Positions 2,522-60,970 of a DNA stretch of 64,000 nucleotides are shown here, piece by piece. Position 1 is the stretch's first letter; every line of letters starts with the position of its first letter. The translations under genes and the position numbers were made by a program. Source of the DNA: Mytilus edulis. Taxonomy: Eukaryota. The notes under the pieces were generated by a model. That model did no database searches and was not told the origin of the DNA. It was given only the letters and a program-made list of their open reading frames with translations. Location of the stretch: assembly GCF_963676685.1 (NCBI RefSeq), contig NC_092351.1:67766001-67830000 (forward strand), read 5' to 3'.

Positions 2522-2800
2522 AAATAAGAAGAAGATGTGGTATGATTGCTAAAGAGACAACTTTACACCCAAGACCAAACAACACAGAAGTTAGGAACTA
2601 TAGGTCACAGTATGGCCTTAAACAATGAGCAAAACCCATACTACATAGAAAGCTATAAAAAGCAAACAGGACAAATGTAAAACAGTTCAAATGTGAAAAC
2701 TAGAGGCCTGATTTATACATGTACAAAACATCAAGCAAAATACTAAGATAATACACAGCAACAAATGACAACCACTGAGTTACTTGGGAGATGCACAGTC
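2522..2800 (+). repeat. Interspersed repeat (aagaagatgtggtatgattgc.aa.gagacaact family)
   Basis: Same motif recurs in reverse orientation at ~6950-7015 (inserted in the retroelement, taacaa duplicated) and ~3275-3310. Confidence 0.65.
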
Positions 2801-4062
2801 ATATAGAATGTTGGACTATATTTAGGTAGCCTGGCTCAAAGGGCCAAGTAAGCTTTTCTTATTACTTGGCCTCTGTGGTCATCCTTTAACTTTTTACAAA
2901 ATATTGAACCAAACTTGTACAATTATCATTTTGGGTATCAATTTTAAAAGGTGTGTCTGGCAATACTGCCTTCCAACCAACATGGCAGACAGCTTAAAAA
3001 ACAACATACAAGGGTAAAATACAAATGTTGTTTATCATCTTGAGAACGGCTTTTAAAGACAAAATTTGACAGACGCAAATTTCAGAATGTTGAGATCTAC
3101 CTACTTTTCATTTATATCACAAGTTTTACAACTGTCAGATGAATTCTAATAGGAGTCATTTCCCTTAAATGACAAATTTTACTAATTCATTTTTCATTTA
3201 TGAATATTATGTTAAAAATTATAATAGATGTATTAGTGGTAGTTGTAAACTTCAAAGTCACATGGTCTCTTGCAGAGTTTTCTCATTGGCAATTATACCA
3301 CATCTTCTTAATTTGAAACATTAGCAGCACAATTGGAGTTACTGCTCTATAATAATGATTTTTGGATAAAGATTGCATGAAGTAAGTGCAATCAAACCCT
3401 ATGGTACTCAGAGGCAGGTATTAAGGGGGGTATGCCCCCCCCCTTTTCTGGAAAAAATCTGGGTGATTATATAGGGAATAACTGAAGCATGACTGGAGCG
3501 TGGCCCCTTTTGATTGGTTGAACAGCTACTTTATTTCAGATATACACTAGCATATAGCTATAGTTCCTATGTAATTCAAATTCATAATTAATTATTTACT
3601 ATTGATAAATTAATGTGAAAAAGCAAAATACATCAATTTAATCAGTAGATAAAAATTCCATAAAATTTCTTATTATATTATGCTTGTGTAAGATAATAAA
3701 GCTAATTTGATTGCCACAATTTTTGTTCCAACTGTTCAGGGTTTGACCTCTGCGTTTGTATCAGGCTGCGCTCAGCAAAGCATTTTATTTGAAATGCTGT
3801 AACTCCAATTCATACAAATTCTAGACCTCAACAGTAAATATACCAACATATTGTTCGTTTTGATCTACACTACATTAAATTCTTCCGTTAATTTTGTGTG
3901 AAAGCTGAATGATTTAAAAGCAAATGATTAGTTGGATTTTTTTGAAAAATAATAAAAAATATGTATAAAAATGCAAGTAGACTTTATTTCACGAGTAAAA
4001 TCCAGTGTCAACCTCTCTTTCAGGTATAGAGATGTGATTTTTCTCTGAGACAAGTGTTTGTG

Positions 4063-6191: not shown

Positions 6192-7309
6192 GTCTATTAT
6201 CTTGAAAACTATCCTTCTTTTATTGTTTTGGACAATAACTAAAGAAATTGTAGGCTTAACATAAAAACAATGATCAGCAATTCAAGATCAACAACAAGAA
6301 TGAATTCAATTCTAGTCTACAATGTTGGAGAGCCCATTGTTGGAATTGCACATGATGTTAGGTGACTCTTTGTAGAGCTTCTATTTCTAGCAAAAAATTC
6401 TCAACTCACTGACAGTAGAAACTAAACAGCAAATAAATATCAGTAATGTAACACCTACAAATTTCAATATGATTGAAACAATTTCGACACAGTTATTGAG
6501 GATTTTTTTTAATAAATCTCAATTATCAATTTTGTCTATTATCATGTTTAAAAATTGTGAATAACAATTGTGAATAACAATTTTTTCAGTAAACAGCGAA
6601 AGTGAAAGATTTATCCTTATAACATTTATATGTGAAAATAAATTGTCAGAAGGAATCAAAGGGAGGGATTGTTCAACATATAACAATAAGCTTTGGTTTA
6701 AATAAAATAAAATGTTGAAAGAATCGCAATCTTATATTTTGACCATTGCCCAAAAACAGTAAAATTGAGAAAGAAAATGGGGAATGTGTCAAAGCGACAA
6801 CAACCTGGCCATAGAGCCGAAGGCCACCAATGGGTCTTCAATGTAGCGAGAAACTCCCGCACCTGGAGGCGTCCTTCAGATGGCCCCTCGAAAATATGTA
6901 TATACTAGTTCAGTGATAATGGACGTCAGACCATACAAGACTAACAAGTCTGTGTCATTTTGGTCTTTTGTGGATAGTTGTCTCATTGGCAATCATACCA
7001 CATCTTCTTTTTTGTATAACAAAGGCAACAGGCTCCTGATTTGGGACAGGCGCAAAATTGCAGCAGGGTTAAACATGTTTATGAGATCTCAACCCTTCCC
7101 CTATACCTCTAGCCAATGTAGAAGAGTAAACGCATAACAATACGCACATTAAAATTCAGTTCAAGAGAAGTCCGAGTCTGATGTCAGAAGATGTAACAAA
7201 AGAAAATAAACAAAATGACAGTAATACATAAATAACAACAGACTACTAGCAGTTAACTGACATGCCAGCTCCAAACCTCAATTAAACTGATTGAAAGATT
7301 ATGTCTTCA

Positions 7310-7376
7310 TCTAATGAATATCAGGCACAATCCCTCCTGTTAGGGGTTTAGTATCATACTATCATAAAATATATGA
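7310..7376 (-). promoter_or_regulatory. SECIS-like element, copy in the minus-strand retroelement (partly decayed)
   Basis: Same 67-nt architecture on the minus strand; helix I and mini-stem carry mismatches. Confidence 0.65.
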
Positions 7377-7429
7377 GAAGAACATAACCCGTGTCATGCC
7401 AACAACTGTTTTTTAAATAAATGTGTTTA

Positions 7430-8202
7430 GTTTCGATGCAAAGACCCTTAAAGTTAATCAATATTAAAGCCAAAATATGCAATCTTTAATGACCTGACAA
7501 CAGTATCGTAACTATATCCCTTCTTAATAAGTCTGTTTAAAGGTTTTGTAAGCTTTTGAGGTGAATACTGACATTTGTGTGCTTTGTAAAGAATATTACC
7601 ATAAAAGATTGGATGTGAAATACCTGAAGATGTCTGCATGTTGAGGTATTATTTACAAATTATTTCCTCATATCGATGATAAAATTTAGTAAATGTTTTG
7701 ACTAGTTTGTGATATCGAACACCCTGGTGTAATAATTTTTCAGTAATACATAAATTTCTCTCGCTAAAATCTAATACATTGTTACATACACGAGCCAATC
7801 GTACAAGTTGAGATATATAAACACCATAAGATGGTGACAAGGGAACGTCACCATCTAAAAATGGATAATTAACAATAGGAAATGAAAAATCATCTCTTTT
7901 ATCATAAATTTTTGTATTAAGCTTCCCGTTAATGATTGAGATATCAAGATCGAGGAAAGGGCAGTGGTAATTGTTAATATTAGCTTTATTTAAAGTAAGT
8001 TCAACCAGGAACATATACATATAGGTATACTGTTCCCAGGTTCAACAGGATAAATTTCTTTAGTATACATACTGAAGTCGTCATTATTGACAGCCAATAT
8101 ATCATCCAAATATCTAAAAGTATTGTTAAATTTTTGTATCAAATGTTGTTTTGATGGGTCTTTGCTAATTTTAGTCATAAATTGTAACTCATAACAATAC
8201 AA
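7430..8202 (-). pseudogene. Reverse transcriptase pseudogene fragment of the Penelope-like element
   Basis: Three consecutive broken ORFs (7990-8202, 7649-8020, 7454-7639) with YLDD motif and thumb. Confidence 0.85.
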
Positions 8203-8593
8203 GTCAGGGGCCTCTGGCCTTTGTTAGTCTTGTATTATTTTTAATTTTAGTTTCTTGTGTACAATTTGGAGTTTAGTATGGCGTTCATTATCAGAGGCGG
8301 ATTTAGGCGGGGCGGGAAAAATTTTGATTGCTTATATAGGGAATCACTGAAGCGTGACTGGAGCCCCCCCCCCTTAGGCAGTCAGTGAGCCCCCACTTAT
8401 GAAAATTTCTAGATCCGCCGGTGATTATCACTGAACTAGTATATATATTTGTTTAGGGGGCAGCTGAAGGACGCCTCCGGGTGCGGGAATTTCTCGCTGC
8501 ATTGAAGACCTGTTGGTGACCTTCTGCTGTTGTCTTCTCTGTGGTCGGGTTGTTGTCTCTTTGACAGATTCCCCATTTCCATTCTCAATTTTA
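8199..8593 (+). mobile_element. Inverted 3'-terminal segment of the same Penelope-like element, fused to its truncated 5' end
   Basis: Reverse complement of ~6760-7045 (agtcagg..cctctggcctttgttagtcttg...ccattctcaatttta), interrupted by a MITE. Confidence 0.85.
8292..8423. mobile_element. CAG(A/T)GGCGGAT-type MITE, 5-bp TSD attat
   Basis: Imperfect TIR; splits the consensus gcgttcattatcactgaactag of the host element. Confidence 0.8.
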
Positions 8594-9323
8594 TTTTGAC
8601 AGTTACAGGGTTCACTGATCTGACTCAAATTCTGATATTTATTTATAAAATACAAAAACGTATATCCAAATTACATGAAGTGTGAATAAACAATAGACAA
8701 TTTTTTACCTATAATTGTTAACTTTTTATACAAATTGTGGCTTGGATGGAGAGTTGTCACCACAGGCAGTCTTAGAAAAAAAATTCCTATATACCTTAAT
8801 ATAAGTGTTATATATAAAGGTATATAAGAATTTTTTTCTGAGACAAGTGCTTGTGGTTGTCACACTGGCCCTCAAACCACATCTTATTTATGGGTCAACG
8901 TTTCGTGTGTATTTAGTCTGATTAACCATCCAGATGACCTCTGAAGACTGCCAACAGAAATATATATAGATTGTGTCTATATTCAATTTGATTTTTCTAG
9001 GTCAGCTAGATTTCATGTTATAGATTATAAAAATGAGTGAATCAGCCGGTTTTTTTCTGTAAAAGAATGTTATTTTTCTGTCAACCAAATGGTTCACCTT
9101 TTTTTAACCTTTTTTCCACCTTTTTTCCCCTGTTAATGACTGAACACGCCTAACACATGCGTATAAACAATCTCTAGCTAAGGGGTTAAATTCAAGGTCA
9201 CAAGAAAACGGATTCAATAAGGTCAAAGTTGAATAAATCATCGGCGATGTTTTGATATCTTGGGTTTTCTTTTTAAACTGAACTCAACTACCTGCTTTAG
9301 CCTTAAATCGAATAACTATGATT

Positions 9324-9364
9324 TCACTGATGAGTCCTATGTAGACGAAACGCGCGTCTGGCGT
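9324..9364 (+). ncRNA. Type I hammerhead ribozyme, copy 1 (core intact, stem I 5' arm truncated)
   Basis: CTGATGA 9327-9333, GTC/GAC stem II, GAAA 9347-9350, palindromic ACGCGCGT stem III, GTC cleavage triplet 9356-9358. Confidence 0.85.
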
Positions 9365-9668
9365 ACTAAATTATAATCCTGGTACCTTTGATAACTATTT
9401 ACACCACTGCCACTGCTGGTGGATATTTCGTCCCCGAGGGTATCACCAGCCCAGTAGTCAACACTTCGGTGTTGACATGAATATCAATAATGTGGTCATT
9501 TTTATAAATTTCCTGTTTACAAAACTTTGAATTTTTCGAAAAAAACTAAGGATTTTCTTATCCCAGGTATAGATAACCTTAGTCGTATTTGGCACAACTT
9601 TTTGGAATTTTGGATACTCAATGCTCCTCAACTTTGTACTTATTTGGCTTTATAATATTTTGATATGA

Positions 9669-9712
9669 GCGTCACTGATGAGTCTTATGTAGACAAAACA
9701 CGCGTCTGGCGT
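9669..9712 (+). ncRNA. Type I hammerhead ribozyme, copy 2 (full stem I, G12-to-A core mutation)
   Basis: gcgtca/tggcgt stem I, CTGATGA 9675-9681, GTCT/AGAC stem II, AAAA in place of GAAA, GTC 9704-9706. Confidence 0.8.
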
Positions 9713-10571
9713 ACTAAATTATAATCTTGGTACCTTTGATAACTATTCTGTCCAAGTTTTGTAAAAATCTAGAATAGTTTATGAATCTAATAAATGTTTT
9801 AAAAGCTTTAACTACAGACTGTTACTGTATGTAATCTTAACTGGAAGAAAAACTGAGTCCATTTATAAGTAAAAAAAGGAAAAACATGTACACAATTTTA
9901 ACAAAATTTCCCGCTATAGATACTAGCTTTTGATCATAAACAAGCTTCTGTGCAAGTTTGGTACTGAAAACAGGATAGTTTAATAAAGTTAATAAGATTT
10001 AAAAAACTTTAATCTCAGAGTGAATCTAATGTTTCCTGGCAGAAAAACTAAGTCCATTTATAACTAAAATACGGAAAAAATGATTGATTTTTTATTGCAA
10101 AATTTACTTCTGGATCTTATGATCGATTTTAAAAACTTTAATCTCGGAGTGAATGTAATGGTTCCTGACAGAAAACTAAGTCCATTTATAAGTAAAATAC
10201 GAATATACATGATTATTTTTAATTTACTTCTGGATACTATCTTATGATCATAAACAAACTTCTTTCCAAGTTTGGTACACATCCAGGATAGTTTTAATAA
10301 GAAAGTTATTTAAATTTTAAAACCTTTAACCACAGAGTGAATACTTGTGGACGATGCCGGCCGACAACGACGACGAGGGAGTGCAGAATCGGTATGTCTC
10401 GCTTTTTCGACAAAAGTCGAAGGCTCGACAAATATGAAAAACGTTCACATTTGTATTATATGATTTTCTATCAGTTGTTTCTTTGTTTAAAATATTCTAA
10501 GAGTGTTAATCTATGATATGATAAGTAACATACAACTTCTCTAGAAGAAAATATCATGACTTATATCATGA

Positions 10572-11314
10572 CTTATTACGAAGGGATATAATTACGATAC
10601 TGTTGTCAAGTCATTAAAGATTGCATATTTTGGCGTTAATATTGAGTCACTGATAAGGTCTTTGCATCGGAACTAAACACATTTATTCTAAAAACAGTTG
10701 TTGGCATGACACGGGTTATGTTCTTCTCATATATGTTATGATGGTATGATACTAAACCCCTAACGGGAAGGATTGTGCCTGATGTTCATATGATGAAATC
10801 ATAATCTTTCAGTCAGTTTAGTTGAAGTCTGGAGCTGGCATGTCAGTTAACTGCTAGTAGTCTGTTGTTATTTATGTATTATTGTCATTTTGTTTATTTT
10901 CTTTGGTTACATCTTCTGACATCAGACTCGGATTTCTCTTGAACTGAATTTTAATGTGCGTATTGTTATGCGTTTACTTTACTACATTGGTTAGAGGTAT
11001 AGGGGGAGGGTTGAGATCTCACAAACATGTTTAACCCCGCCGCATTTTTGCGCCTGTCCCAAGTCAGGAGCCTCTGGCCTTTGTTAGTCTTGTATTATTT
11101 TAATTTTAGTTTCTTGTGTACAATTTGGAAATTAGTATGGCGTTCATTACCACTGGACTAGTATATATTTGTTTAGGGGCCAGCTGAAGGACGCCTCCGG
11201 GTGCGGGAATTTCTCGCTACATTGAAGACCTGTTGGTGACCCTCTGCTGTTGTTTTTTTATTTGGGCGGGTTGTTGTCTCTTTGACACATTCCCCATTTC
11301 CATTTTCAATTTTA
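10572..11314 (+). mobile_element. Second 5'-truncated copy of the Penelope-like element (ORF tail LITKGYNYDTVVKSLKIAYFGVNIESLIRSLHRN* plus 3' UTR)
   Basis: Close reverse complement of 6760-7530; stop TAA at 10674-10676. Confidence 0.88.
10727..10793 (+). promoter_or_regulatory. Type II SECIS-like element in the retroelement 3' UTR
   Basis: Helix I tcatat/atatga; core ATGAT(10738)...TGAT(10780); 11-bp helix II ggtatgatact/aggattgtgcc with one mismatch; unpaired AAA 10754-10756; apical mini-stem ccc-taac-ggg. Confidence 0.8.
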
Positions 11315-17500: not shown

Positions 17501-20500
17501 GATTTGTAGATCATGTGTTGTCGATTTATGACTATTGAACAGCAGTATACAATGTTCAATATATACAATACTATTGACCTTATTTATGTTTCATGTTTGT
17601 TTGTTTTCTTACTATTTTCAGATTTCAGTTACAATAGTCAGAGCTTATTTGATATGGTGAATGATCTCCCAGATGAACTTTTGGGACCTAGTGAAAGCTA
17701 TCAGAACAGTGGAAATGACAATGATACTCAGAACCACATTGGTAAACAGGACTCGTCACAGAACAAACATGTTCAGCTTTCAGCTCTTTTACAGAATAAT
17801 CCATCTCAGTCAAGTCCAGTTCCAAGCAGAAGTCCAAATGTGATGAATAATCCGGTTAATAGTATCAGAAGCCCATTATCGAATAGTTTGTCTTCACCTC
17901 CACACAATAGTATGATGGGTAAAGCTGTATCAGCAGGCAGTGAGTTAAACTTTGCTTCAAGTAGTGCTAGCTACATGATGTCAAACACCAACACAGTCAA
18001 TAGTATGGGAACAATGGCAAGCAATAATGTCATGAGTTCTCTGGGATCTCACGCAAGTTCTATACCAAGTGGCATGACAGGTTATTCCATGGCTCAGAGA
18101 AACCCAATGATGCATAATGGGCCTCAGTATGCAGTAAGTGGTCAAGGACGTGGGACAGGGATAGGCCAGCAACTGACCAATTTACCACAGTCAGGGATGT
18201 TGAATAACATTAATAACCCGAATTTGCAAGCTCGTATGAACATGGTTCATCCTGGATTACAGCCAAATGCTTCAAATCAGTCACAGCTTATGAACGTAAG
18301 TGATGATATTTATTTATGTACAGTTGTAGTGATCTCCAAAGGACTCTGGAAAGGGCAGGGGGAAAATATGACAAACCCAGAGAGTAGAACTGTGAATTGA
18401 CAAAAGGATTTAAATTGTGTTGGGTGCATGGTAAAGGCAGAGGTAGCTAAAAAAAGCTGAATGATAGTTCCTAGGGGAATTATTATGTTGACAGTACTTG
18501 ACATCAAAGATATTTATAGAACTTAAGTATTGTCTATGTTATGGTACATGTAAAAGAAAGTTATTTTAAGTTTATTGTAGCACAAATAGTTATTTATATT
18601 GAGAATTTATTTTGTACATATATAGTTATATGTATATAAAAAAAAATCCTATGCAAATTACATGTAGATGTATTCTAAAATCTAATCATAATCATTTGTT
18701 TTTAGCAAAACGGTCCTGTTGGGAGTAGTCCTTTTGGTTTTACACAGAACAAAATGAACATGGGACAACCAGCATCAACTGGGAGTTTCAGTAGTCCATC
18801 AATGGCATCGATCATGACAACACATTCACCTATGCCAGGCAACAACTTAGTTTCAGTGAGTAGTTCAATCTTCATATGAAGGTCTCTGACATGTATAGGA
18901 GATACAAGTTCCACATAACTAATCAATGAATACCATACAAAAGAAAAGAAAACACACCAATATACAAATTTTGATTTGAAAAGGAGGATGCAAGACTTGA
19001 TTCCCCATTAACCACAGCCAAAACTCTTGGTGATCTCAAGTTGCAAATATTTCAATGTAAAATGTACTACATATTTTTATCTGTTTCAAAAGTTTATTTC
19101 TGTGCAATGTTACCAGTAACAGTACTTTTTGTCTACTAAAGGAGTAGGTTTGATAAGGCCCCAAAATGGTTCCTAATTCTAGCTGCAATTTGACATTAGG
19201 ATTTACTGACCACCATCACAAGGTAACTAGCTAATGTAATGACTAGATTGGAAAAAACTCTTTATGATGAAAATTTATGTGTTCTATTCATGACGTTACA
19301 AAAAACTCATTTTGCATATGTCAGACTTGAATATTACGTTAGCGGAATCCATGTTTCCTAGGTCTTGATTTGGTTGATATCTGAATGATTGTGTCCAATG
19401 TCACAATAATCTCCATTTTGACCTATTTGGGATGTAAAAATCAATGCTTGGAAATAAAATTTTGGCAAAAAATGTTTTATTAACTTTTCACATGTCTTTT
19501 CATCAACTCAAGACACTTTTTTAACCCAAAACATTGATCTGAATAATCAGGGCCAAATGTTGGCCCAAACCAAACTTTTTCATTTTTATAGTGCTTGAAA
19601 GGTTTGAGTTGTCTTGATGGAAAAACTATGTTATTCAGTTCTATTTCTTACTCTTACTTTTTGTTTATTTCAGCAAAATTCACCACAAGCTACACTTGGA
19701 GGAATTAGTGGACAATTAAGTGCTGGTTTAAATGCTGGATTACCAGGACCAACTGGTGGAGATCGTCAGCCTCCTACAGCAGACCCAGACAAGAGGAAAC
19801 TTATTCAGCAACAATTAGTGCTCTTGTTACATGCTCACAAGTGCCAACGAAGACAACAGAATAATGGAGAAACATGTGGACTTCCACATTGTAAAACCAT
19901 GAAAAATGTTCTTAATCACATGACAACTTGTAATGCTGGCAAATCATGCCAAGGTTTGTAATCTCACCTTTTTAGCTCACCTGGCCCAAAGGGCCAAGTG
20001 AGCTTTTCCCATCACTTTGCATCCGTCGTCCGTCGTCGTTAACTTTTACAAAAATCTTCTCCTCTGAAACTACTGGACCAAACTTAGCCACAATCATCAT
20101 TGGGGTATCTAGTTTAAAAAATGTATCCGGTGACCCGGCCAACTAACCAAGATGGCTGCCACGTCTAAAAATAGAACATAGGGGTAAAATGCAGTTTTTG
20201 GCTTATAACTCAAAAACCAAAGCATTAAGACCAAATCTGACATGGGGTAAAATTGTTTATTAGGTCAAGATCTATCTGCCCTGAAATTTTCAGATGAATC
20301 GGACAACCTGTTGTTGGGTTGCTGCCCCTGAATTGGTAATTTTAAGGAAATTTTGCTGTTTTTGGTGATCTTGAACATTATTATAGATAGAGATAAACTG
20401 TAAACAGCAATAATGTTCAGCAAAGTAAGATTTACAAATAAGTCAACATGACCGATATGGTCAGTTGACCCCTTTAGGAGTTCTTGGCCTTTATAGTCAA

Positions 20501-41500: not shown

Positions 41501-44055
41501 TCATTTCACCATGTGTATATATTAATGTACTTTTAAGTCGTTGCATAGGTGTTGTGCATTATTTACTAAAGACTTTTCATTCTTGTAGGAGATGTTACAT
41601 ATGTTGTGCATTATTTACTAAAGACTTTTTATTCTTGTAGGAGATGTTACATATCATATTTAGACAGTGTACATTTTTTCCAACCAAGACAACTCAGGAC
41701 AGCAGTTTATCATGAAATCCTTATTGGTTATTTAGAATATGCCAAACAAATGGGATTCACATGGGCACATATTTGGGCTTGTCCACCAAGTGAAGGAGAT
41801 GATTACATATTTCATTGTCATCCACCAGAACAAAAAATTCCAAAACCCAAACGTCTACAAGAATGGTATAAAAAGATGTTAGATAAAGCTATTATTGAAA
41901 GATGTGTGATTGATTATAAGGTTTGTATTTTTGAACACTGTTGATTTATTATTATTTGTTAGATACCAATTTTCATAGTTTTCTTTGGCACAGGTGATCC
42001 ATGAATTAAATTGTTAATTGATTTACACATTTTCTACAGGCTTTGTATACAGAGATCCATTAAGGGCTATTCCTTGTTTTGAAAATTTGCTGTATTTTTA
42101 TGAATATGTGCAATTGTGCTTTAAAAAATTATGGTTTTTAATACTAGATGGATAGTTTCTCATTAGGGGACCTATAACATTCAACAATGAAAGTCAAATC
42201 CTCTTTTAGAATGTTTAGTTTATGTGTACAGAAAAGAAAAAATCACCATCTTTTTATTCTCCTACCGACAAGGTTGTTCCTTGTTTCTGAATCCTAATTG
42301 TGATTGTGTTTATAAAATATACTTGTATTATTCATAATAAAATATTGTTTACTTAAAAAAGTCGAGTACTTTAGGTTTGCACTCTGTCCGTCTGTCCATC
42401 TGTCAGTCGACAAATCTGTTTTCCACCCTTTTTTTCTTCATTCTTGATAATCTTGAAGATATTAATTTGATATTTGGTTTGTTGTTTTATCATGACAAGT
42501 AAAAGATCAAGTTTAAATTTTGTTCCAGTCTGATGATTAAGTGCAGAATTATGATCCTTTGACTTCAAAAATTCAATAAAATAATCAGTTTTCTGGACTT
42601 TTTTTCATCATGCATGAAGATGTTAATTTGAAAATTGGTATGATCGAATTTTGAATTTTATTCCAGTCTGATGATTTTGTGCAGAGTTGGACTTACAAAA
42701 TTCACTTATATATCAGTTTTCATTATATATATATAGTGAACAACATGACAAGTTATATTTATTCCAATGCAATACAATGAGTGTTTAACCAGTAGGGGAC
42801 TATGTATCACCATGCAATGCTTGTTATCAGTGCTGTTAAAAGGCTGAAAATATCCCTAAAAATTCAAAATTAACAGATTTTTAACAATTAAATCAAGATG
42901 CACAAAGTTTTAAGTATTGGTCAGAATTTAGGGTTCTTTTGTACTTTAACAATATCACAATAACAATAAAATGACCTAAATTTTGGACAAGGTAAGGGAC
43001 GACATCAAAAGTTCAATGTAGGATAAAAAACTTAATTCACATAGTTTTTCCACTGACCCCCCACCCCCCTCTTAACTTAATTTGGGAAAAATTGATTTAC
43101 CAATAGGGATATATGTAAAAATTGATTTTGGATATACAAAACTTGCAGAATTTTAACCCCCAAACCCCCCAACCCCAAAACTATTTGATTTAAGTTTTTT
43201 ATCCTACATCGATCTTTTGATGTCGTCCCTAAATGGCATGAAGCCAAATTTATCGACTTCTGTTGTATGAATGGGATAAACTGACTTTTCAATTCTCAAG
43301 GCTAAATAAGTATTTTATAGGCTAAACACAAACTTACCTGTCAAGGTAGAATTGTAATCTGAGTGATAGTCACCATAAAGGTTTTTTTTTGTGTTTGGGT
43401 ATGAACAATGACAAAGTTTGTGATAAGGTCAGTTTGAGGGGACCTATCCATGGTAAGTCAATGATATTTGGTAAAGAGGTGTATACGCCCTGCCGTATCA
43501 CATTTTCATGAGGATTATTGGTCACTAGACTTTCAGTCATGATACATTGACATGAATGTTTTGCATACTTTATGTGTTAAGTATTCTTAATTTCAACATT
43601 TGCATTTTACTTTACAAATTTCATAGAGGAGGGACACATCTATTTTTCAATTGCTTGATACCTTTGTGCTTATTGGAACATTTTATTAGTTGTACATATT
43701 ACATATTTTACATTTAATTTCAGGATATTTTAAAAGATGCAATCGAAAACAATATAAAATGTGCCACACAAATACCCTATTTTGAGGGAGATTTCTGGCC
43801 CAATGTTTTAGAAGAAAGCATCAAAGAATTGGACCAGGAAGAGGAAGAAAAGAAGAAACGTGAAGAAGCTGAAGCTGCAGCAGCAGAACAAGCAAGTGTT
43901 GAGGAGGTTGTTGAAGGAGAAGCTGACAATCCTGTAAGTGTTACTAGACATAGATATTCCTTATTTATTCTTTGCTTCTCTGTATGTCTGTCAGTCTTTT
44001 GTTAGTATCTTCTAAGGGTAACCTCTTGTAAAAGTTTTTATACCCCATGCAGCGA

Positions 44056-47000: not shown

Positions 47001-48529
47001 AAATGAAAAAATGATGAAAGGTAAAAGGATCAAGTCTACAAAAGACTTGTCAAAATTATGGCTCTGTCATTCTAGGTTAAATTTATAAACATTTAAAAAA
47101 AAAAAAAAAATATCGCTGATATTCTGAAGATTTTATTGTTTATTTAATCAAAGTCCTTTCCTATTTTATTTCAAAAACAAGTTTTATATTGAGTCAAGAT
47201 TAACACTATACTAGAATTGCGCAACAAAATCAGAAACAAACATCCACCTCAAAAATACACTTCTCTTGAGTTCGTTCTGCGTTGAATTCTTAAATTCATG
47301 GTTTGCTGACACCCATGAAGACTACAAAATTTGGTATATTAAGATTAGAAATGAATCCACAGTATATAATTTGGAATATCTGACTGTAGTCAAGGTATCT
47401 TTTGCTTCAACTAAATATTTTTTGTATTTTTACAGGATTTTGATCTGTGTTGTGTTTGTTATGAAAAAGAAGGACATTGTCATAAAATGGACAAACTTGG
47501 TTTGGATCTTGATGACGGTTCATCCCCCAATGATAAACAGGATGATCCTCAACAATCACGCCGTCAATCTATTCAACGTTGTATTCAATCATTAGTGCAT
47601 GCATGTCAGTGCAGGGACGCAAATTGCAGACTCCCAAGTTGTCAGAAGATGAAACGTGTTGTATCTCATACAAAGTGTTGTAGAAAAAAGGCTAACGGAG
47701 TTTGTCCAATTTGCAAACAACTTATAGCATTGTGTCTGTATCATGCAAAACATTGCACAGAAAATAAGTGTCAAGTGCCATTCTGTTTACAGATTAAACA
47801 TAAGTTAAGGCAGCAACAGTTACAGCATAGACTTCAACAAGCGCAAATGTTGCGGAGGCGAATGGCCTCAATGCAACGGACTATTACACCTAGTGCTCAA
47901 AACACAACACAACAATCTCCTGCCGCAACAGGAATCCAACAACAACCAGTTTCATCAAATTTCAATTCTGGTAAACCTGTGGCTGGACCTCCAGCAGCTG
48001 CTTTACAAGCTGCAATGGCTGCTCAAGAGGAGGCTTCTCGTCAAGCTAGTCTTCAGTCTGGTGCAGCAAGTGTGGCTACTATGCCCCCACCACAAGTGCA
48101 AGCACCAGCTCAAAAAGTACCAGTGAACACTGCAATGAATAACTCTAAAGTGGTCTGGCCACCAAATTCAACCTACCAAACAATGCCTCAAAATCCCATG
48201 AATCCACCACAAATGAGACCGCCAATGCAGCCAAATCCTATGAATTCTGGAATACAAATGCAGCAACAAACACAGCAACCGGTTGCTGGAGTACGACCAG
48301 GAATGCCAAATGCTGGTCCTCAAAGACCGCAGCAGCATGCTTTAGAACAATTATTAAGAACTTTAAAATCACCCAACTCGCCGCAGCAGCAGCAACAAGT
48401 GTTACAAATTCTTAAGTCAAACCCCCATCTTATGGCAGCTTTTATCAAACAGAGAACTCAGCAGCAACAAGGTCAACCTGGTCAACACAATATGAACCAG
48501 TCAAATCCAAACAATATAGCACAGTCACA

Positions 48530-48561
<32 letters not shown>

Positions 48562-49148
48562 AGCTGTGGCAACTTCAACAACAGAGATTAAGAATGCAAC
48601 AACAACAACAACAAAATCAACAGCATCCGGGTATGCCAATGAATCAACAATTTCAGCAACAACAACAGTTTCAACAGCAACGACCTAGAATGCCTTACAA
48701 TCCTCAATATACAGATAGCAACATTCAACAATTTCAACCGCAAATGCAGAATGCACAAATGATGCAACAGCATCAATTAAGACAACATATGGCTGGAGGA
48801 AATAATCCTCAGCTTTCATCTCAACAAAATGTGGCATCACCCAACTTCATGCAATCAGTGCGATCACCTAATTCATTACCACAGACTGTGCGATCACCAC
48901 AACCTAACCAATTATCTCGGCAGCAACTTAACCCATCACCTCGCCAACCTCAAATGTCACCACATGTCAGTCAATCACATCCAAATATGATGGGTACAGA
49001 TCCAAATCAATTACATTCTGATCCTAATTTATTATTAGGATCTTTGCAAGGCCAAGGGCCAGACCCTGGTCTTTTGCTACCCAATGACAATGAAGTGCAA
49101 CCTTTGACCCCACAAGACCAGTTGACTCGATTTGTTGATACATTGTAG
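14420..49148 (+). CDS. CREBBP: CREB-binding protein / p300 histone acetyltransferase orthologue (CBP, nejire-like), 28 coding exons, ~2183 aa
   Basis: Spliced translation gives hallmark motifs in the expected order: [17 protein letters not shown]1 ([18 protein letters not shown]), KIX ([19 protein letters not shown]...[20 protein letters not shown]), bromodomain, RING/PHD, HAT ([34 protein letters not shown]), ZZ, TAZ2, NCBD ([35 protein letters not shown]) and C-terminal [14 protein letters not shown]. Exon lengths sum to 6552 nt with matching phases. Confidence 0.98.
15301..15374 (+). repeat. Perfect 37-bp tandem duplication
   Basis: gaaagattttatatgaactgaacaaataatagcaaaa x2. Confidence 0.9.
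15691..16369. mobile_element. Non-autonomous DNA transposon in CBP intron 1, TIR CAGGGATCTCCATGG, 5-bp TSD acatt
   Basis: 15-bp perfect TIR with TSD on both sides. Confidence 0.88.
17622..18295 (+). CDS. CREBBP: CBP exon 2 (N-terminal nuclear-receptor interaction region)
   Basis: ttttcag acceptor, gtaagt donor; [31 protein letters not shown] (LxxLL). Confidence 0.93.
18706..18855 (+). CDS. CREBBP: CBP exon 3 (low complexity)
   Basis: tttttag / gtgagt; 150 nt open, phase 0-0; [17 protein letters not shown]... Confidence 0.85.
19674..19953 (+). CDS. CREBBP: CBP exon 4 (TAZ1 N-half)
   Basis: ttttcag-type acceptor / gtttgt; [25 protein letters not shown]...CNAGKSCQ. Confidence 0.96.
19969..21231 (+). 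mobile_element. HINE-like element in CBP intron 4, with a ~488-bp internal duplication
   Basis: tttttagctcacctggcccaaagggccaagtgagc, (CGT)n, 3' ccaaggtgagc plus ggctc..gagcc hairpin; starts ~16 bp after the exon 4 donor; older relatives near 2170-2480, 2820-3330 and 49915-53570. Confidence 0.85.
21535..21672 (+). CDS. CREBBP: CBP exon 5 (TAZ1 C-half)
   Basis: tttttag / gtaagt; [33 protein letters not shown]. Confidence 0.96.
21826..22053 (+). CDS. CREBBP: CBP exon 6
   Basis: tgttgtag / gtaaat; conserved [12 protein letters not shown]. Confidence 0.93.
22549..22812. mobile_element. Fold-back MITE in CBP intron 6 (long TIRs tacagcaaaatgcattgag...)
   Basis: ~50-bp imperfect TIR; interior largely self-complementary. 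Confidence 0.82.
23253..23445 (+). CDS. CREBBP: CBP exon 7 (KIX start)
   Basis: gttttag / gtaagt; [21 protein letters not shown]. Confidence 0.94.
24597..24714 (+). CDS. CREBBP: CBP exon 8 (KIX)
   Basis: tgacag / gtatgt; [39 protein letters not shown]. Confidence 0.97.
25601..25709 (+). CDS. CREBBP: CBP exon 9 (KIX end)
   Basis: tttacag / gttagt; [25 protein letters not shown]. Confidence 0.96.
26107..26380. mobile_element. Second copy of the same fold-back MITE in CBP intron 9
   Basis: cagcagattgcattgagtgtgtag ... ctacacactcaatgcaatctgctg. Confidence 0.82.
26446..26534 (+). CDS. CREBBP: CBP exon 10 (disordered linker)
   Basis: tttatag / gtaata; 89 nt restores phase 1 to 0; [30 protein letters not shown]. 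Confidence 0.82.
27703..28100. mobile_element. TTAA-flanked MITE, TIR GGATGTACTT.GGTGAGGTT (Kolobok- or Crypton-like)
   Basis: 20-bp TIR with one mismatch, TTAA on both sides; distant relative in opposite orientation at ~40370-40805. Confidence 0.8.
28347..28445 (+). CDS. CREBBP: CBP exon 11 (Q/P-rich linker)
   Basis: tttcagcag (NAGNAG) / gtatga; 99 nt open; [33 protein letters not shown]. Confidence 0.8.
28821..28995 (+). repeat. Dispersed ~175-bp duplicate of the exon 12 3' end, donor and downstream intron (29713-29888)
   Basis: ttgtcatcgtctcag|gtaagacaattttct...tatttcaacactttg at both positions, few mismatches. Confidence 0.93.
29575..29727 (+). CDS. CREBBP: CBP exon 12 (P/S/Q-rich linker)
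   Basis: ttttcag / gtaaga; 153 nt open; [20 protein letters not shown]... Confidence 0.85.
29928..30599. mobile_element. piggyBac-type MITE, TIR CCCTTTC(A/G)CCGAT, TTAA TSD
   Basis: ttaa|ccctttcaccgat ... atcggcgaaaggg|ttaa. Confidence 0.9.
30830..31177 (+). CDS. CREBBP: CBP exon 13 (T-rich, with a cluster of psi-K-x-E SUMO-type motifs)
   Basis: tttacag / gtattt; ...[23 protein letters not shown]. Confidence 0.88.
31817..32030 (+). CDS. CREBBP: CBP exon 14
   Basis: ttttcag / gtaggt; open 214 nt ending KPRCKK, joining to IFKP. Confidence 0.88.
32360..32478 (+). CDS. CREBBP: CBP exon 15 (bromodomain)
   Basis: [40 protein letters not shown]; ttttcag / gtaagt. Confidence 0.97.
32820..32990 (+). 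CDS. CREBBP: CBP exon 16 (bromodomain)
   Basis: [12 protein letters not shown]...[18 protein letters not shown]; aaacag / gtaaag. Confidence 0.97.
33683..33840 (+). CDS. CREBBP: CBP exon 17 (bromodomain end / RING start), followed by a GC donor
   Basis: [53 protein letters not shown]; donor AG|gcaagt. Confidence 0.95.
35880..35960 (+). CDS. CREBBP: CBP exon 18 (RING); alternative in-frame acceptor at 35850
   Basis: [27 protein letters not shown]; ctgacag / gtaagt. Confidence 0.94.
36765..36821 (+). CDS. CREBBP: CBP exon 19 (57 nt)
   Basis: [19 protein letters not shown]; tttcag / gtaagt. Confidence 0.95.
37383..37570. mobile_element. PIF/Harbinger (Tourist-like) MITE, ~40-bp TIR, TAA TSD
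   Basis: taa|gggctgttccagaaaatactatgtcccc ... ggggacatagtattttctggaacagccc|taa. Confidence 0.9.
37979..38056 (+). CDS. CREBBP: CBP exon 20 (PHD)
   Basis: [26 protein letters not shown]; ttacag / gtacga. Confidence 0.96.
38752..38819 (+). CDS. CREBBP: CBP exon 21 (PHD end)
   Basis: [22 protein letters not shown]; ttgcag / gtaagt. Confidence 0.95.
39385..39558. mobile_element. Related Harbinger-type MITE, TSD tca
   Basis: gggctgttcca...cccagggaaggca / tgccttccctggg...tggaccagccc. Confidence 0.75.
39722..39869 (+). CDS. CREBBP: CBP exon 22 (HAT start); alternative in-frame acceptor at 39707
   Basis: [50 protein letters not shown]; donor gtaaat. Confidence 0.93.
40938..41084 (+). CDS. CREBBP: CBP exon 23 (HAT)
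   Basis: [39 protein letters not shown]; ttgtag / gttagt. Confidence 0.97.
41550..41653 (+). repeat. 52-bp tandem duplication spanning the exon 24 splice acceptor
   Basis: tgttgtgcattatttactaaagactttt(c/t)attcttgtaggagatgttacata x2, one mismatch. Confidence 0.95.
41641..41920 (+). CDS. CREBBP: CBP exon 24 (HAT catalytic core)
   Basis: [16 protein letters not shown]...[39 protein letters not shown]...IDYK; catalytic D, W and Y positions intact. Confidence 0.97.
42996..43229. mobile_element. Harbinger-type MITE, ~45-bp TIR GGGACGACATCAAAAG, TAA TSD
   Basis: Long TIR; taa on both flanks. Confidence 0.9.
43724..43933 (+). CDS. CREBBP: CBP exon 25 (HAT / start of autoinhibitory loop)
   Basis: DILKDAIEN...[25 protein letters not shown]; tttcag / gtaagt. 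Confidence 0.95.
44035..44990 (+). mobile_element. HINE-like element in CBP intron 25 with ~4.6 x 169-bp tandem array
   Basis: tttttataccccatg...(CCGT)n; units start at 44107, 44276, 44445, 44614, 44783; 3' gtggggtat plus gtgagcatgctcac hairpin. Confidence 0.88.
45617..45772 (+). CDS. CREBBP: CBP exon 26 (Lys-rich autoinhibitory loop)
   Basis: [20 protein letters not shown]...[16 protein letters not shown]; tcgtag / gtagga. Confidence 0.95.
46317..46598 (+). CDS. CREBBP: CBP exon 27 (HAT end, ZZ start)
   Basis: VFFVIRLH...[31 protein letters not shown]...[22 protein letters not shown]. Confidence 0.97.
47436..49148 (+). CDS. CREBBP: CBP exon 28 (ZZ end, TAZ2, NCBD, polyQ, stop TAG)
   Basis: tttacag acceptor; [25 protein letters not shown]2 [24 protein letters not shown]. 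Confidence 0.97.
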
Positions 49149-52478: not shown

Positions 52479-53120
52479 TAAAATTGAGAAAGGAAATGGT
52501 GAATATGTCAAAGCGACAACCACCCGACCATAGAGCAAACAACAGCCGAAGGCAACCAATGGGTCTTCAATGTAGCGAGAATTCCCGCACCCGTAGGTGT
52601 CCTTCAGCTGGCCCCTAAAATGTGCATAATAGTACAGTGATAATGGACGTCATACTAAACTCCGAATTATACACAAGAAACTAAAATTTAAAATCATACA
52701 AGACTAACAAAGGCCAGAGGCTCCTGACTTGGGACAGGCGCAAAATTGTGGCAGGGTTAAACATGTTTATGAGATCTCAACCCTCCCCCTATACCTCTAG
52801 CCAATGTAGAAAAGTAAAACAATAACAATACGCACATTAAAATTCAGTTCAAGAGAAGTCCGAGTCTGATGTCAAAAGATGTAACAAAAGAAAATAAATA
52901 AAATGACAATAATACATAAATAACAACAGACTACTAGCAGTTAACTGACATGCCAGCTCCAGACCTCAATTAAACTGATTGAAAGATTATGTCTTCATCA
53001 TATGAATATCAGGTACAATCCCTCCCGTTAGGGGTTTAGTATCGTACTATCATAAAATATATGAGAAGAACATAACCGTGTCATGCCAACAACTGTTTTT
53101 TTAGAAATAAATGTGTTTAG
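52479..53120 (-). mobile_element. Third copy (3' UTR only) of the Penelope-like element
   Basis: Colinear with 6760-7430; ttagata occurs at both junctions. Confidence 0.88.
52998..53064 (-). promoter_or_regulatory. SECIS-like element, third copy
   Basis: Minus strand reads ATGAT agtacgatact AAA cccctaacggga gggattgtacc TGAT. Confidence 0.72.
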
Positions 53121-59807: not shown

Positions 59808-60876
59808 GTGTACATATATTCATCTGAAAGAAAAGAAAAATGTCATATAACTTGACATGCACAAGATGAACTATACGTTTGTTTTTTATAGTCCGTGTTG
59901 TATTTGTAATATTTCATTAATTGCAATCAAGACTAGAAATGCTTGCGTTAAAACTTTCCGTGCATATAATGAATTCTAGCTAAAGTACACCAAACGCAAA
60001 TACAGGTATAGAAGATGACAACAGAACCATATTATAAATTAACTCCTATATTTTAGATCATTAAAAATGTATGACAAAGATTTTCTTTCTCTTTTATAAT
60101 TGCGTCTTGTAAGTATTATTACGATCGACACAAACATATTATTAGGTGTTTTATTAGGTGTTTTAATATTATACCGTTTACAATATTAGAGTTTGACGTT
60201 GCCAAGCACACAAAATCAAAAACCAAGTTTTACAGGAAAACATATCGCTAGTATATTTTTTTTAAATTCATTTGGTAAATTATAACGATACGTATATTGT
60301 ATTTTTTTTATTGGCATGCACGAACATATTTTTAATTTTTTTTATTGGCATGCACGAACATATTTTTAATAACCTTGATGAAAGGACATCCATGCTAAGT
60401 TATATAAGTTATGGGTCCAGTAGAGATTATGCTTCACCCGAGATTATAAACATCCTCGTGATCATTGCTTGAACACAGTGATTATAACTTCAATGTGCGT
60501 GTTTAGATCTTTATGTATTTATCAAGATTATACGAGTTTTGAACATTTAAAAGATGGAGTGCTTTCTTCTTTTCCAGTAATAAGAAACTGCTATCAATTT
60601 TTTAAAATGTCATAATGACATTACTTTCACATAGCTGTCTAATTCATGTTCACCAAATTGACTCAACAAATTCTCATTATCGACTTATCATATATTAAAA
60701 CGAAAATCCAAATAAAAAAGTCTAAAATAAACATTAATCAATATACTTCCTGAAATAATGTCCTTCTATAGTAAAATTGCTCTATTTTTGCATAGTTTTT
60801 AAAAGAAATATATAGCGTTAACTACACTATGCGAAAATAGTATGCCTTGCTGTTGTAACAGACTACATTGAGCATA

Positions 60877-60970
60877 CATTGAAAACCCATTGGTGGCATT
60901 CGGCTGTTGTCTGCTCTATGGTCGGGTTGTTGTCGCTTTGACACATTCCCCATTTCCATTCTCAATTTTA
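60877..60970 (+). mobile_element. Short 3'-terminal fragment of the same Penelope-like family
   Basis: cattgaaaacccattggtgg...ccattctcaatttta matches the termini of the other copies; a more decayed trace lies near 24105-24215. Confidence 0.75.

What the first reader, a model, noticed from the sequence alone, without database searches (positions are those of the whole stretch)
10727..10793. A selenocysteine-insertion (SECIS) hairpin carried and spread by a retrotransposon
Seen: about 60 nt after the stop codon of the Penelope-like RT ORF lies a 67-nt hairpin with every eukaryotic type II SECIS feature (helix I, AUGAU/UGAU core, 11-bp helix II, unpaired AAA, apical mini-stem). It occurs three times (10727 +, 7310 -, 52998 -). 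In the 53-kb copy two G-U pairs of helix II become Watson-Crick (U-A, C-G), although the first helix II pair is a mismatch there. Known: Naiad-clade Penelope-like elements have an N-terminal GIY-YIG and some encode selenoproteins with a SECIS. The ORF here ends after the RT thumb with no endonuclease, which fits. Inference: the parent element makes a selenoprotein, and because 5' truncation leaves the 3' UTR intact, this abundant repeat scatters UGA-recoding signals across the genome, where they could recode host mRNAs or compete for SBP2.
Basis: partly seen in the sequence, partly recalled or inferred. Interest (0 to 1): 0.88.

Follow-up and report, generated by a model that had tools for sequence, protein, structure and literature searches.

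The report
Selenocysteine signal on a retrotransposon tail
The hairpin is very probably a real selenocysteine-insertion signal in the tail of a young, abundant Naiad-type Penelope-like retrotransposon that uses four UGA codons for selenocysteine; this kind of element was described in clams and spiders in 2021, so this is a new family, not a new principle.

Summary
Window 10728-10792(+) has every SECIS feature. It matches Rfam SECIS_1 at 32.3 bits, just under the 35-bit cut-off, and recurs at 52999-53063(-) and, decayed, at 7313-7375(-). All three sit in 5'-truncated copies of one 3,965-nt element.

Long copies elsewhere in the genome carry a 1,002-codon GIY-YIG-plus-RT frame. Its only internal stops are four TGA codons, each aligned to an invariant cysteine in 35-47 homologues. 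The frame ends in TAA 51 nt before the hairpin.

Relatives on 80 marine metagenome contigs give independent support. Every relative with a TGA or a SECIS falls in one clade, with the SECIS right after the stop codon. Helix II differs in sequence between families but keeps pairing. All-cysteine relatives have no SECIS.

The genome holds 5,318 exact copies of the SECIS tip but only 174 copies of the endonuclease region. It also has five tRNA-Sec genes.

This is the kind described by Craig et al. 2021 (PMC8557442), who also proposed SECIS donation to host genes. The scan had already noted this family in at least eight other windows of this genome. Effects on host mRNAs or SBP2 are untested, and none of the three window copies could recode the neighbouring gene.

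The parts
10570..10673 (+). Copy A: the last ~35 codons of the RT frame of a young 5'-truncated copy. The whole copy is 10570-11314, which equals positions 3221-3965 of the 3,965-nt unit at 99.6% identity.
   Evidence: blastn of the unit against the window; frame read
10674..10676 (+). TAA stop codon of the element's frame, 51 nt before the SECIS
10728..10792 (+). SECIS of copy A, identical to the commonest form in the genome. Core AUGA 10738-10741 and GA 10781-10782; helix II 10743-10752 with 10770-10779; AAA 10754-10756; mini-stem 10758-10760 with 10765-10767.
   Evidence: Rfam SECIS_1 32.3 bits; own model R1 59.0 bits; 40 of 40 scored genomic copies are 100% identical over 141 nt
10793..11314 (+). 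Rest of the 3' UTR up to the fixed 3' end of the element. The last 282 nt are the part repeated upstream of full-length copies as a pseudo-LTR. A block at 10995-11073 is conserved across families.
6760..8202 (-). Copy B: an older 5'-truncated copy (unit 2587-3965, 84% identity) with broken RT frame pieces at 7454-8202
7313..7375 (-). Decayed SECIS of copy B. Helix I and the mini-stem are each broken by substitutions.
   Evidence: R1 46.4 bits; no Rfam match at E up to 10
52479..53120 (-). Copy C: a 3' UTR-only copy (unit 3324-3965, 90% identity) that starts at the stop codon
52999..53063 (-). SECIS of copy C. Two G-U pairs of helix II are Watson-Crick here, and the first helix II pair is A.C.
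   Evidence: Rfam 33.0 bits; R1 61.5 bits
8200..8593 (+). Two pieces of the element's 3' end (8200-8293 and 8424-8593; unit 3711-3803 and 3797-3965) lying head to head with copy B. This is the inverted truncated copy typical of Penelope-like insertions.
   Evidence: arrangement described in PMC8557442
60875..60970 (+). A 96-nt fragment of the element's 3' end (unit 3869-3965, 84.5% identity). It has no SECIS.

Best explanation
The hairpin is the SECIS element of a young, high-copy Naiad-clade Penelope-like retrotransposon whose protein is a selenoprotein. The following is shown from sequence. The full-length unit is 3,965 nt and is preceded by a 282-nt pseudo-LTR. It carries one 1,002-codon frame with an N-terminal GIY-YIG endonuclease, a CxC linker and a C-terminal reverse transcriptase. 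The only internal stops are four TGA codons: the second Cys of the C-x4-C-x2-C finger, the Cys before GIY, the first Cys of the CCHH finger, and the Cys eight residues after DKA. The following is inferred. On the element's mRNA the 3' UTR SECIS recruits SBP2, eEFSec and tRNA-Sec, so the four UGA codons are read as selenocysteine. Without that, no RT could be made, because three UGA codons lie in the endonuclease domain upstream of the RT and the fourth at the start of the RT region. Target-primed reverse transcription starts at the 3' end and usually aborts, so most insertions are tails that keep the SECIS. The three window copies are dead tails of this kind. Copy A has the intact commonest SECIS form, copy C is slightly diverged, and copy B is decayed.
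For: (1) Rfam SECIS_1 matches end to end at 32.3 and 33.0 bits on the sense strand of two copies, and it is the only SECIS match in the whole element. (2) The four in-frame stops are all TGA, while the upstream non-coding part has a mix of TAA, TAG and TGA. Every copy in hand that covers a site has TGA there. Genome-wide, 166 of 174 copies have TGA at the third site. Four of nine long copies have no other stop or frameshift. (3) The four TGA codons fall on 4 of the only 9 columns that are at least 85% Cys in 47 full-length homologues, and those four columns are 100% Cys. (4) On 80 metagenome contigs with relatives, a strict SECIS pattern hits 26 times on the sense strand and once on the antisense strand in 250 kb. 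Of the 26, 24 lie within -40 to +250 nt of the RT stop codon. Rfam alone finds a SECIS right after the stop in 11 of 20 loci, one of them at 38.8 bits, above the cut-off. (5) Helix II differs in sequence between families but keeps pairing. Ten of 11 pairs show changes on both sides; the covariation score is 0.563 against 0.244 when shuffled and 0.15-0.23 when slid, and 0.607 against 0.255 on 32 distinct rows. RNAalifold finds helix II unaided. (6) SECIS presence goes with TGA: 22 loci with both, 6 with TGA only, 4 with SECIS and a known Cys, 21 with neither. All rows with a TGA or a SECIS form one clade with SH-aLRT 100. (7) The host has five tRNA-Sec genes at 77-80 bits. (8) The same architecture is published for four Naiad families (PMC8557442).
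Against: This copy scores below Rfam's gathering cut-off (32.3 against 35). Helix II has one A.G mismatch and three G-U pairs. The single-sequence fold is not better than shuffles (z -1.47). The rows of alignment A3 were picked by a filter that demands pairing, so its covariation figures are partly circular. The non-circular evidence is the positional enrichment and the Rfam hits. The SECIS-TGA association is not corrected for shared ancestry. Six relatives with a TGA (L076, L086, L101, L104, L105, L146) show no SECIS or only a weak one. SECISearch3 was not available.
Confidence: 0.88

Rival explanations
1. The hairpin is a kink-turn element with another job, such as binding an L7Ae-family protein for RNA stability or localisation, or serving as an RT recognition site. 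The UGA codons would then be passed by ordinary near-cognate readthrough, not by selenocysteine insertion.
For: The 5' AUGAUG and 3' CUGA resemble C and D boxes, and weak C/D snoRNA matches (15-17 bits) overlap the 3' side of the hairpin. SECIS cores and C/D boxes both form kink-turns (established knowledge). No direct evidence for Sec insertion exists here.
Against: Across families only the SECIS core is kept. The base after AUGA varies among A, C, G and U, so box C is not conserved. The unpaired AAA sits at a fixed 10-11 bp from the core, which is specific to SECIS. The hairpin occurs only in lineages with TGA at Cys codons and never in the all-Cys relatives. Four readthrough events per protein would be very inefficient. 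The host has five tRNA-Sec genes.
Confidence: 0.06
2. The hairpin is a chance AT-rich stem, and the TGA codons are lesions of a dead family.
For: The Rfam score is sub-threshold, the fold z-score is not significant, and the window-wide E-value is only 0.017.
Against: Four random codon positions out of 1,002 would all fall on the nine conserved Cys columns with probability about 3e-9. Copies are about 99% identical, and four of nine long copies have otherwise uninterrupted frames. The same TGA positions and a SECIS after the stop recur in families down to 49% protein identity.
Confidence: 0.02

Closest known systems
Clam selenoprotein-coding Naiads, Naiad_Scon (Sinonovacula constricta) and Naiad_Mmer (Mercenaria mercenaria), Craig et al. 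2021, PMC8557442
   Same: Both are N-terminal GIY-YIG plus RT Penelope-like elements. Both have UGA at the Cys before GIY-YIG, at the first Cys of the CCHH finger and eight residues after DKA. Both have a SECIS in the 3' UTR, pseudo-LTRs, frequent 5' truncation and a high copy number.
   Different: This family has a fourth UGA at the second Cys of the C-x4-C-x2-C finger; Scon's fourth UGA is in RT6(D) and Mmer has three. Its SECIS starts 51 nt after the stop, not 1-21 nt after or overlapping it. Its SECIS has a mini-stem (type II form), whereas the paper reports type I. The host has 14 chromosome-scale pieces, which fits a mussel and not those clams (my own knowledge of karyotypes). I could not compare sequences because the paper's supplementary files are not held.
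Spider selenoprotein-coding Naiads, Naiad_Sdum and Naiad_Smim (same paper)
   Same: Multiple UGA codons at conserved Cys positions, including one or both of the first two Cys of the CX2-5CxxC finger, plus a 3' UTR SECIS.
   Different: The spider families lack the UGA at the first CCHH Cys, and the paper infers an independent origin from the clam families. Here the fourth UGA joins the clam set.
Eukaryotic SECIS elements of host selenoprotein mRNAs (Rfam RF00031)
   Same: AUGA and GA core, helix II of about 10 bp, unpaired AAA, an apical mini-stem, and a 3' UTR location.
   Different: This one is carried by a mobile element in thousands of copies, and this copy scores 2.7 bits under the curated cut-off.
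Selenoprotein P
   Same: One mRNA with several UGA-Sec codons decoded processively. Bivalves are known for very Sec-rich SelP (cited in PMC8557442).
   Different: SelP typically uses two SECIS elements. Only one was found in this element, and the protein is unrelated.

Membership tests
Eukaryotic SECIS element | Core of tandem non-Watson-Crick pairs: 5' AUGA opposite 3' GA | tested here: met
   AUGA at 10738-10741 and GA at 10781-10782. The core is kept in all 18 family representatives, with A or G before UGA.
Eukaryotic SECIS element | Helix II of about 9-12 bp between the core and the apical adenosines | tested here: met
   10 pairs with one A.G mismatch. Covariation is seen in 10 of 11 pairs across families.
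Eukaryotic SECIS element | Unpaired AA(A) in the apical loop or bulge at a fixed distance from the core | tested here: met
   AAA at 10754-10756. Alignment columns 34-36 of A3 are AA-rich and one A is invariant.
Eukaryotic SECIS element | Lies in the 3' UTR of an mRNA with an in-frame UGA | tested here: met
   51 nt after TAA, and four in-frame TGA codons upstream.
Eukaryotic SECIS element | Reaches Rfam SECIS_1 gathering score (35 bits) | tested here: inconclusive
   32.3 and 33.0 bits in the window. Relatives score 26.6-38.8 bits, one above the cut-off. In the genome 13 of 130 scored hits are over the cut-off, and many 65-nt hits share one score of 33.8 bits.
Eukaryotic SECIS element | Binds SBP2 and directs Sec insertion | not testable with these tools
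   Needs a reporter assay, 75Se labelling or CLIP.
Naiad clade of Penelope-like elements | Single ORF with the GIY-YIG endonuclease N-terminal to the RT | tested here: met
   IIY...YVGET at residues about 90-110 and RYLDD in the C-terminal half. Four full-length homologues were scanned: Pfam GIY-YIG matches the N-terminal part in all four (above the cut-off in three), and RVT_1 matches the C-terminal part in three, below its cut-off.
Naiad clade of Penelope-like elements | CX2-5CxxC and CCHH finger-like motifs, a CxC linker motif and a DKA motif | tested here: met
   C50-x4-U55-x2-C58; U97 and C102; C385-x-C387; DKA followed by U522. All are conserved Cys columns in the homologues.
Naiad clade of Penelope-like elements | Pseudo-LTR or partial tandem structure and frequent 5' truncation with a fixed 3' end | tested here: met
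   The 282-nt 3' end is repeated upstream. In 30 copies the 5' ends vary and the 3' end is fixed about 590 nt after the SECIS.
Naiad clade of Penelope-like elements | No canonical hammerhead ribozyme in the element | tested here: met
   The Rfam scan of the full unit at E up to 1 finds no hammerhead.
Naiad clade of Penelope-like elements | Groups with named Naiad reference sequences in a tree | not tested
   Reference proteins are in supplementary file S4 of PMC8557442, which is not held.
Selenoprotein-coding Naiads | In-frame UGA at the Cys before GIY-YIG and at DKA+8, with a SECIS after the stop | tested here: met
   matched against the description read.
Selenoprotein-coding Naiads | Same family as Naiad_Scon or Naiad_Mmer | tested here: not met
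   The set of UGA positions, the SECIS distance (51 nt against 1-21 nt or overlapping the stop) and the SECIS form differ from the published description. No sequence comparison was possible.

The most novel reading that the evidence does not exclude
The thousands of truncated, SECIS-bearing tails act on the host. Either sense-oriented copies in 3' UTRs have turned UGA stops of host genes into Sec codons and so made new selenoproteins, or transcribed copies soak up SBP2 and shift host selenoprotein output. Five tRNA-Sec genes in this genome would fit a raised demand for Sec decoding. A more modest and more likely novelty: one clade of marine-invertebrate Naiads has swapped Cys and Sec repeatedly at four positions, with patterns from one to four Sec. 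That would be a natural series for asking what Sec adds at zinc-finger-like cysteines.
Probability: 0.07. Interest if true: 0.85.

Novelty: new member of a known kind. Interest (0 to 1): 0.4.

Why it matters
Selenoprotein-coding transposons are known from only four families in one paper. This family adds a host with a mussel-like karyotype, a new combination of four Sec positions and a type II-form SECIS set 51 nt after the stop. The metagenome relatives show that the trait belongs to one large clade and not to isolated oddities. In that clade Cys and Sec alternate at four fixed sites, and a SECIS is present wherever a TGA is. For annotators the practical point is that these frames look like pseudogenes unless UGA is read as Sec. 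The genome also holds more than 5,000 well-preserved SECIS hairpins, which will swamp selenoprotein gene finders. The published idea that such tails can donate a SECIS to host genes is directly testable in this genome.

Tried and rejected
Rfam at gathering level on the window gave nothing, so the SECIS match only shows at E-value level.

Pfam finds no family in the element's own pieces at E up to 0.01. Only weak, unrelated matches appear at E up to 5. The domain assignment therefore rests on motifs and on homologues that do match GIY-YIG and RVT_1.

Covariation within the genome is uninformative: 63 of 70 SECIS instances in hand are identical.

Relatives on metagenome contigs were used instead.

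The 124 genomic SECIS_1 hits, which may include host selenoprotein genes and other Naiad families, could therefore not be read.

The listing of cluster members gave no organism names. The organism was not identified by me.

The paper's supplementary sequences are not held.

Natural copies answered the question.

The C/D-box snoRNA reading was rejected because box C is not conserved across families.

Host use of the window copies was rejected for these three. Copy A lies 6 kb upstream of the first recognisable exon of the CBP/p300-like gene. Copy C is antisense to that gene and 3.3 kb past its TAG stop. Copy B is decayed.

Full report
**Observation.**
- Helix I is 10728-10732 with 10788-10792.
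- AUGA is at 10738-10741.
- Helix II is 10743-10752 with 10770-10779. It has ten pairs, three of them G-U and one an A.G mismatch.
- The unpaired AAA is at 10754-10756.
- The CCC/GGG mini-stem is 10758-10760 with 10765-10767.
- The 3' GA is at 10781-10782.

Rfam finds nothing in the window at gathering level. At E-value level SECIS_1 matches 10728-10792 end to end at 32.3 bits against a cut-off of 35. The E-value is 8e-5 on 301 nt and 0.017 on the whole window. The copy at 52999-53063(-) scores 33.0 bits. The copy near 7310(-) is too decayed for Rfam, but my own model finds it at 7313-7375. The single-sequence fold reproduces the SECIS shape but is not significant by energy (z -1.47).

**What the three copies are.** All three are 5'-truncated copies of one repeat with a fixed 3' end.
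- Copy A, 10570-11314(+), is 99.6% identical to the last 745 nt of the unit.
- Copy B, 8202-6760(-), is an older 1.4-kb copy at 84% identity with broken RT frame pieces.
- Copy C, 53120-52479(-), is 3' UTR only, at 90% identity.
- Pieces of the 3' end lie head to head with copy B at 8200-8593(+). Another fragment is at 60875-60970(+).

The frame ends in TAA at 10674-10676, 51 nt before the hairpin.

**The full-length element.** The window's genome is 1.37 Gb, with 14 chromosome-scale pieces plus small scaffolds. Forty of 40 scored copies of the 141-nt SECIS stretch there are 100% identical to copy A. Walking upstream gave nine long copies. The unit is 3,965 nt and is preceded by a 282-nt repeat of its own 3' end, which is a pseudo-LTR.

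On the copy I used as a ruler, the frame runs 1,002 codons from an ATG to the TAA. It reads, in order:
- a C-x4-C-x2-C finger;
- the GIY...YVGET endonuclease motif with CCHH;
- a CxC motif;
- DKA;
- RT motifs, including RYLDD.

Its only internal stops are four TGA codons, while the non-coding stretch upstream has a mix of TAA, TAG and TGA. Every copy in hand that covers a site has TGA there. Genome-wide, 166 of 174 copies with the exact flanks of the third site have TGA. Four of the nine long copies have no other stop or frameshift. I name none of them as special, and I built no consensus.

**The TGA codons are cysteine positions.** A HMMER search with the piece between the third and fourth TGA found 2,752 relatives. 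The closest ones end exactly at the fourth TGA position. More distant full-length relatives of 850-1,100 aa read through it. I aligned 47 full-length homologues to the frame, with X at each TGA. The four X columns are 100% Cys in 35, 42, 43 and 47 homologues. Only nine columns in the whole protein are at least 85% Cys: residues 50, 55, 58, 86, 97, 102, 385, 387 and 522. The TGA codons occupy four of them: 55, 86, 97 and 522. By chance that is about 3e-9. Four of these homologues were scanned with Pfam. GIY-YIG matches the N-terminal part in all four (above the cut-off in three). RVT_1 matches the C-terminal part in three, below its cut-off. This is the Naiad domain order.

**Independent support from relatives.** I therefore scanned metagenome contigs with an alignment of the RT piece. 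This gave 80 loci at 36-99% identity.
- A strict SECIS descriptor of my own gave 26 sense-strand hits and one antisense hit in 250 kb. Of the 26, 24 lie within -40 to +250 nt of the RT stop. The descriptor required A/G-UGA, GA, at least 8 bp of helix II with at most one mismatch, AA just after helix II, and at least 4 bp of helix I.
- Rfam SECIS_1, which knows nothing of these data, hit 11 of 20 loci. All hits are on the sense strand right after the stop, and one scores 38.8 bits.
- The hairpins share the core, the AAA and the geometry, but helix II differs almost completely between families.
- On a plain MAFFT alignment, helix II is 84% paired and 10 of 11 pairs change on both sides. The covariation score is 0.563, against 0.244 when shuffled and 0.15-0.23 when slid.
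- RNAalifold finds helix II unaided.
- A covariance model built from that alignment found a SECIS at E up to 2e-6 in 34 loci and in all three window copies. It found none in any relative at or below 46% identity, and gave one weak off-target hit in 314 kb. Covariation on its alignment is 0.607 against 0.255.

One caveat applies. The first alignment's rows were picked by a pairing filter, so the positional enrichment and the Rfam hits are the non-circular evidence.

**SECIS goes with TGA.** The codons at the four sites in the relatives are, in site order:

| Pattern (U = TGA, C = Cys) | Where found |
|---|---|
| U-U-U-U | this family, its 94-99% kin, a 63-67% family, and L100/L109 |
| C-U-U-U | most families at 50-57% identity (the published clam pattern) |
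| C-C-U-U | L099 |
| C-U-C-U | L101 |
| C-C-C-U | L106 |
| Cys at every readable site | all relatives at or below 46% identity (one outlier, L149, reads ACT at the fourth site in a poor alignment) |

Four families have a SECIS but Cys at the fourth site. Their contigs are too short to show the other three sites. The counts are 22 loci with TGA and SECIS, 6 with TGA only, 4 with SECIS and a known Cys, and 21 with neither. This is not corrected for shared ancestry. On an RT tree, every row with a TGA or a SECIS falls in one clade of 38 rows (SH-aLRT 100), and the all-Cys rows lie outside.

In most families the SECIS overlaps the stop or starts within about 20 nt of it, as published. In this family's subclade it sits 51-133 nt downstream.

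**Spread.** A 24-nt word from the SECIS tip occurs 5,318 times in the genome, and its reversed control occurs 0 times. The endonuclease region occurs 174 times. About 97% of copies are therefore truncated tails that keep the SECIS. A whole-genome SECIS_1 search gave 47,381 rough first-look candidates, and 124 of the 130 scored ones matched. The loci could not be read. The genome has five tRNA-Sec genes at 77-80 bits.

**Mechanism.** Shown from sequence: the anatomy, the TGA-Cys correspondence, the conserved SECIS, its link with TGA, and the truncation pattern. Inferred: the SECIS recruits the Sec machinery to the element's mRNA so that the four UGA codons are read as Sec. This is required for any RT to be made. 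Aborted reverse transcription from the 3' end then scatters the tails.

**Host context.** The window's host gene is a CBP/p300-like gene on the + strand. Its TAZ, HAT_KAT11 and Creb_binding exons span 19.6-49.1 kb, and it ends in TAG at 49146-49148. Copy A lies upstream of its recognisable exons. Copy C is antisense and 3.3 kb past the stop. Copy B is decayed. None can recode this gene.

**Comparison with what is known.** Craig et al. 2021 (PMC8557442) described Naiads and four selenoprotein-coding families, two in clams and two in spiders. Those families have three or four UGA codons at the same conserved cysteines and 'grade A' type I SECIS elements 1-21 nt after the stop or overlapping it. 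The authors also proposed that 5'-truncated copies could donate a SECIS to host 3' UTRs. No later paper on the topic turned up.

This family differs in three ways. Its fourth UGA is at the second Cys of the first finger. Its SECIS is further from the stop. Its SECIS has a mini-stem.

The scan had already noted this family in at least eight other windows of this genome. One of those notes was followed up and called the host Mytilus. I could not check the organism beyond the 14 large pieces.

**Verdict.** This is a new member of a known kind, and its interest is moderate.

Noticed in passing
window 9321-9371 and 9669-9712 (+): Hammerhead_1 matches at 31.3 bits (cut-off 34) and 22.8 bits, 348 nt apart, within a repeat-rich stretch (9324-10342) that lies between copies B and A of the SECIS element. 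It probably belongs to a retrozyme or to another, canonical Penelope-like element.
   Followed up: no
window 10995-11073 (+): A G+C-rich block of the 3' UTR is 81-86% identical in families (L074, L111, L132) whose remaining 3' UTR cannot be aligned with this one. It spans the start of the part reused as pseudo-LTR (about 11033). It folds at -32 kcal/mol (z -1.7) and has no Rfam match. It may be a promoter or an RT recognition element.
   Followed up: partly
window 17513-49148 (+): The host gene is a CBP/p300-like acetyltransferase. zf-TAZ is at 19614-19961, HAT_KAT11 at 41606-41944, and zf-TAZ plus Creb_binding in a last exon at 47487-49148 that ends in TAG.
   Followed up: partly
G000 C7:74815896-75374462 and C1:49149863-49149948: Five tRNA-Sec genes score 77-80 bits, and four of them lie within 560 kb on one chromosome. 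That is more than the one or two I would expect in an animal genome (my own knowledge). Separately, a tandem array with an 895-nt period on C10 (14.40-14.44 Mb) holds tRNA-like sequences just under the tRNA-Sec cut-off (45.9 bits).
   Followed up: no
loci L070-L111, L115, L129, L131-L133 (metagenome contigs): Relatives show a mosaic of Sec and Cys at the four sites (UUUU, CUUU, CCUU, CUCU, CCCU). Four families keep a SECIS although the fourth site is Cys. The four-Sec state appears in two separate parts of the tree, which implies repeated Cys/Sec switches.
   Followed up: partly
L083 and L096: In these two families the frame ends in TGA 10 nt before the SECIS. This resembles the published Naiad_Mmer case, where a UGA too close to the SECIS is thought to act as the stop.
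   Followed up: no
G000, 13 places listed (for example C1:1338309-1338373, 41.4 bits): These SECIS_1 hits are above the gathering score and are 63-65 nt long. They may be host selenoprotein genes or other Naiad families.
   Followed up: no
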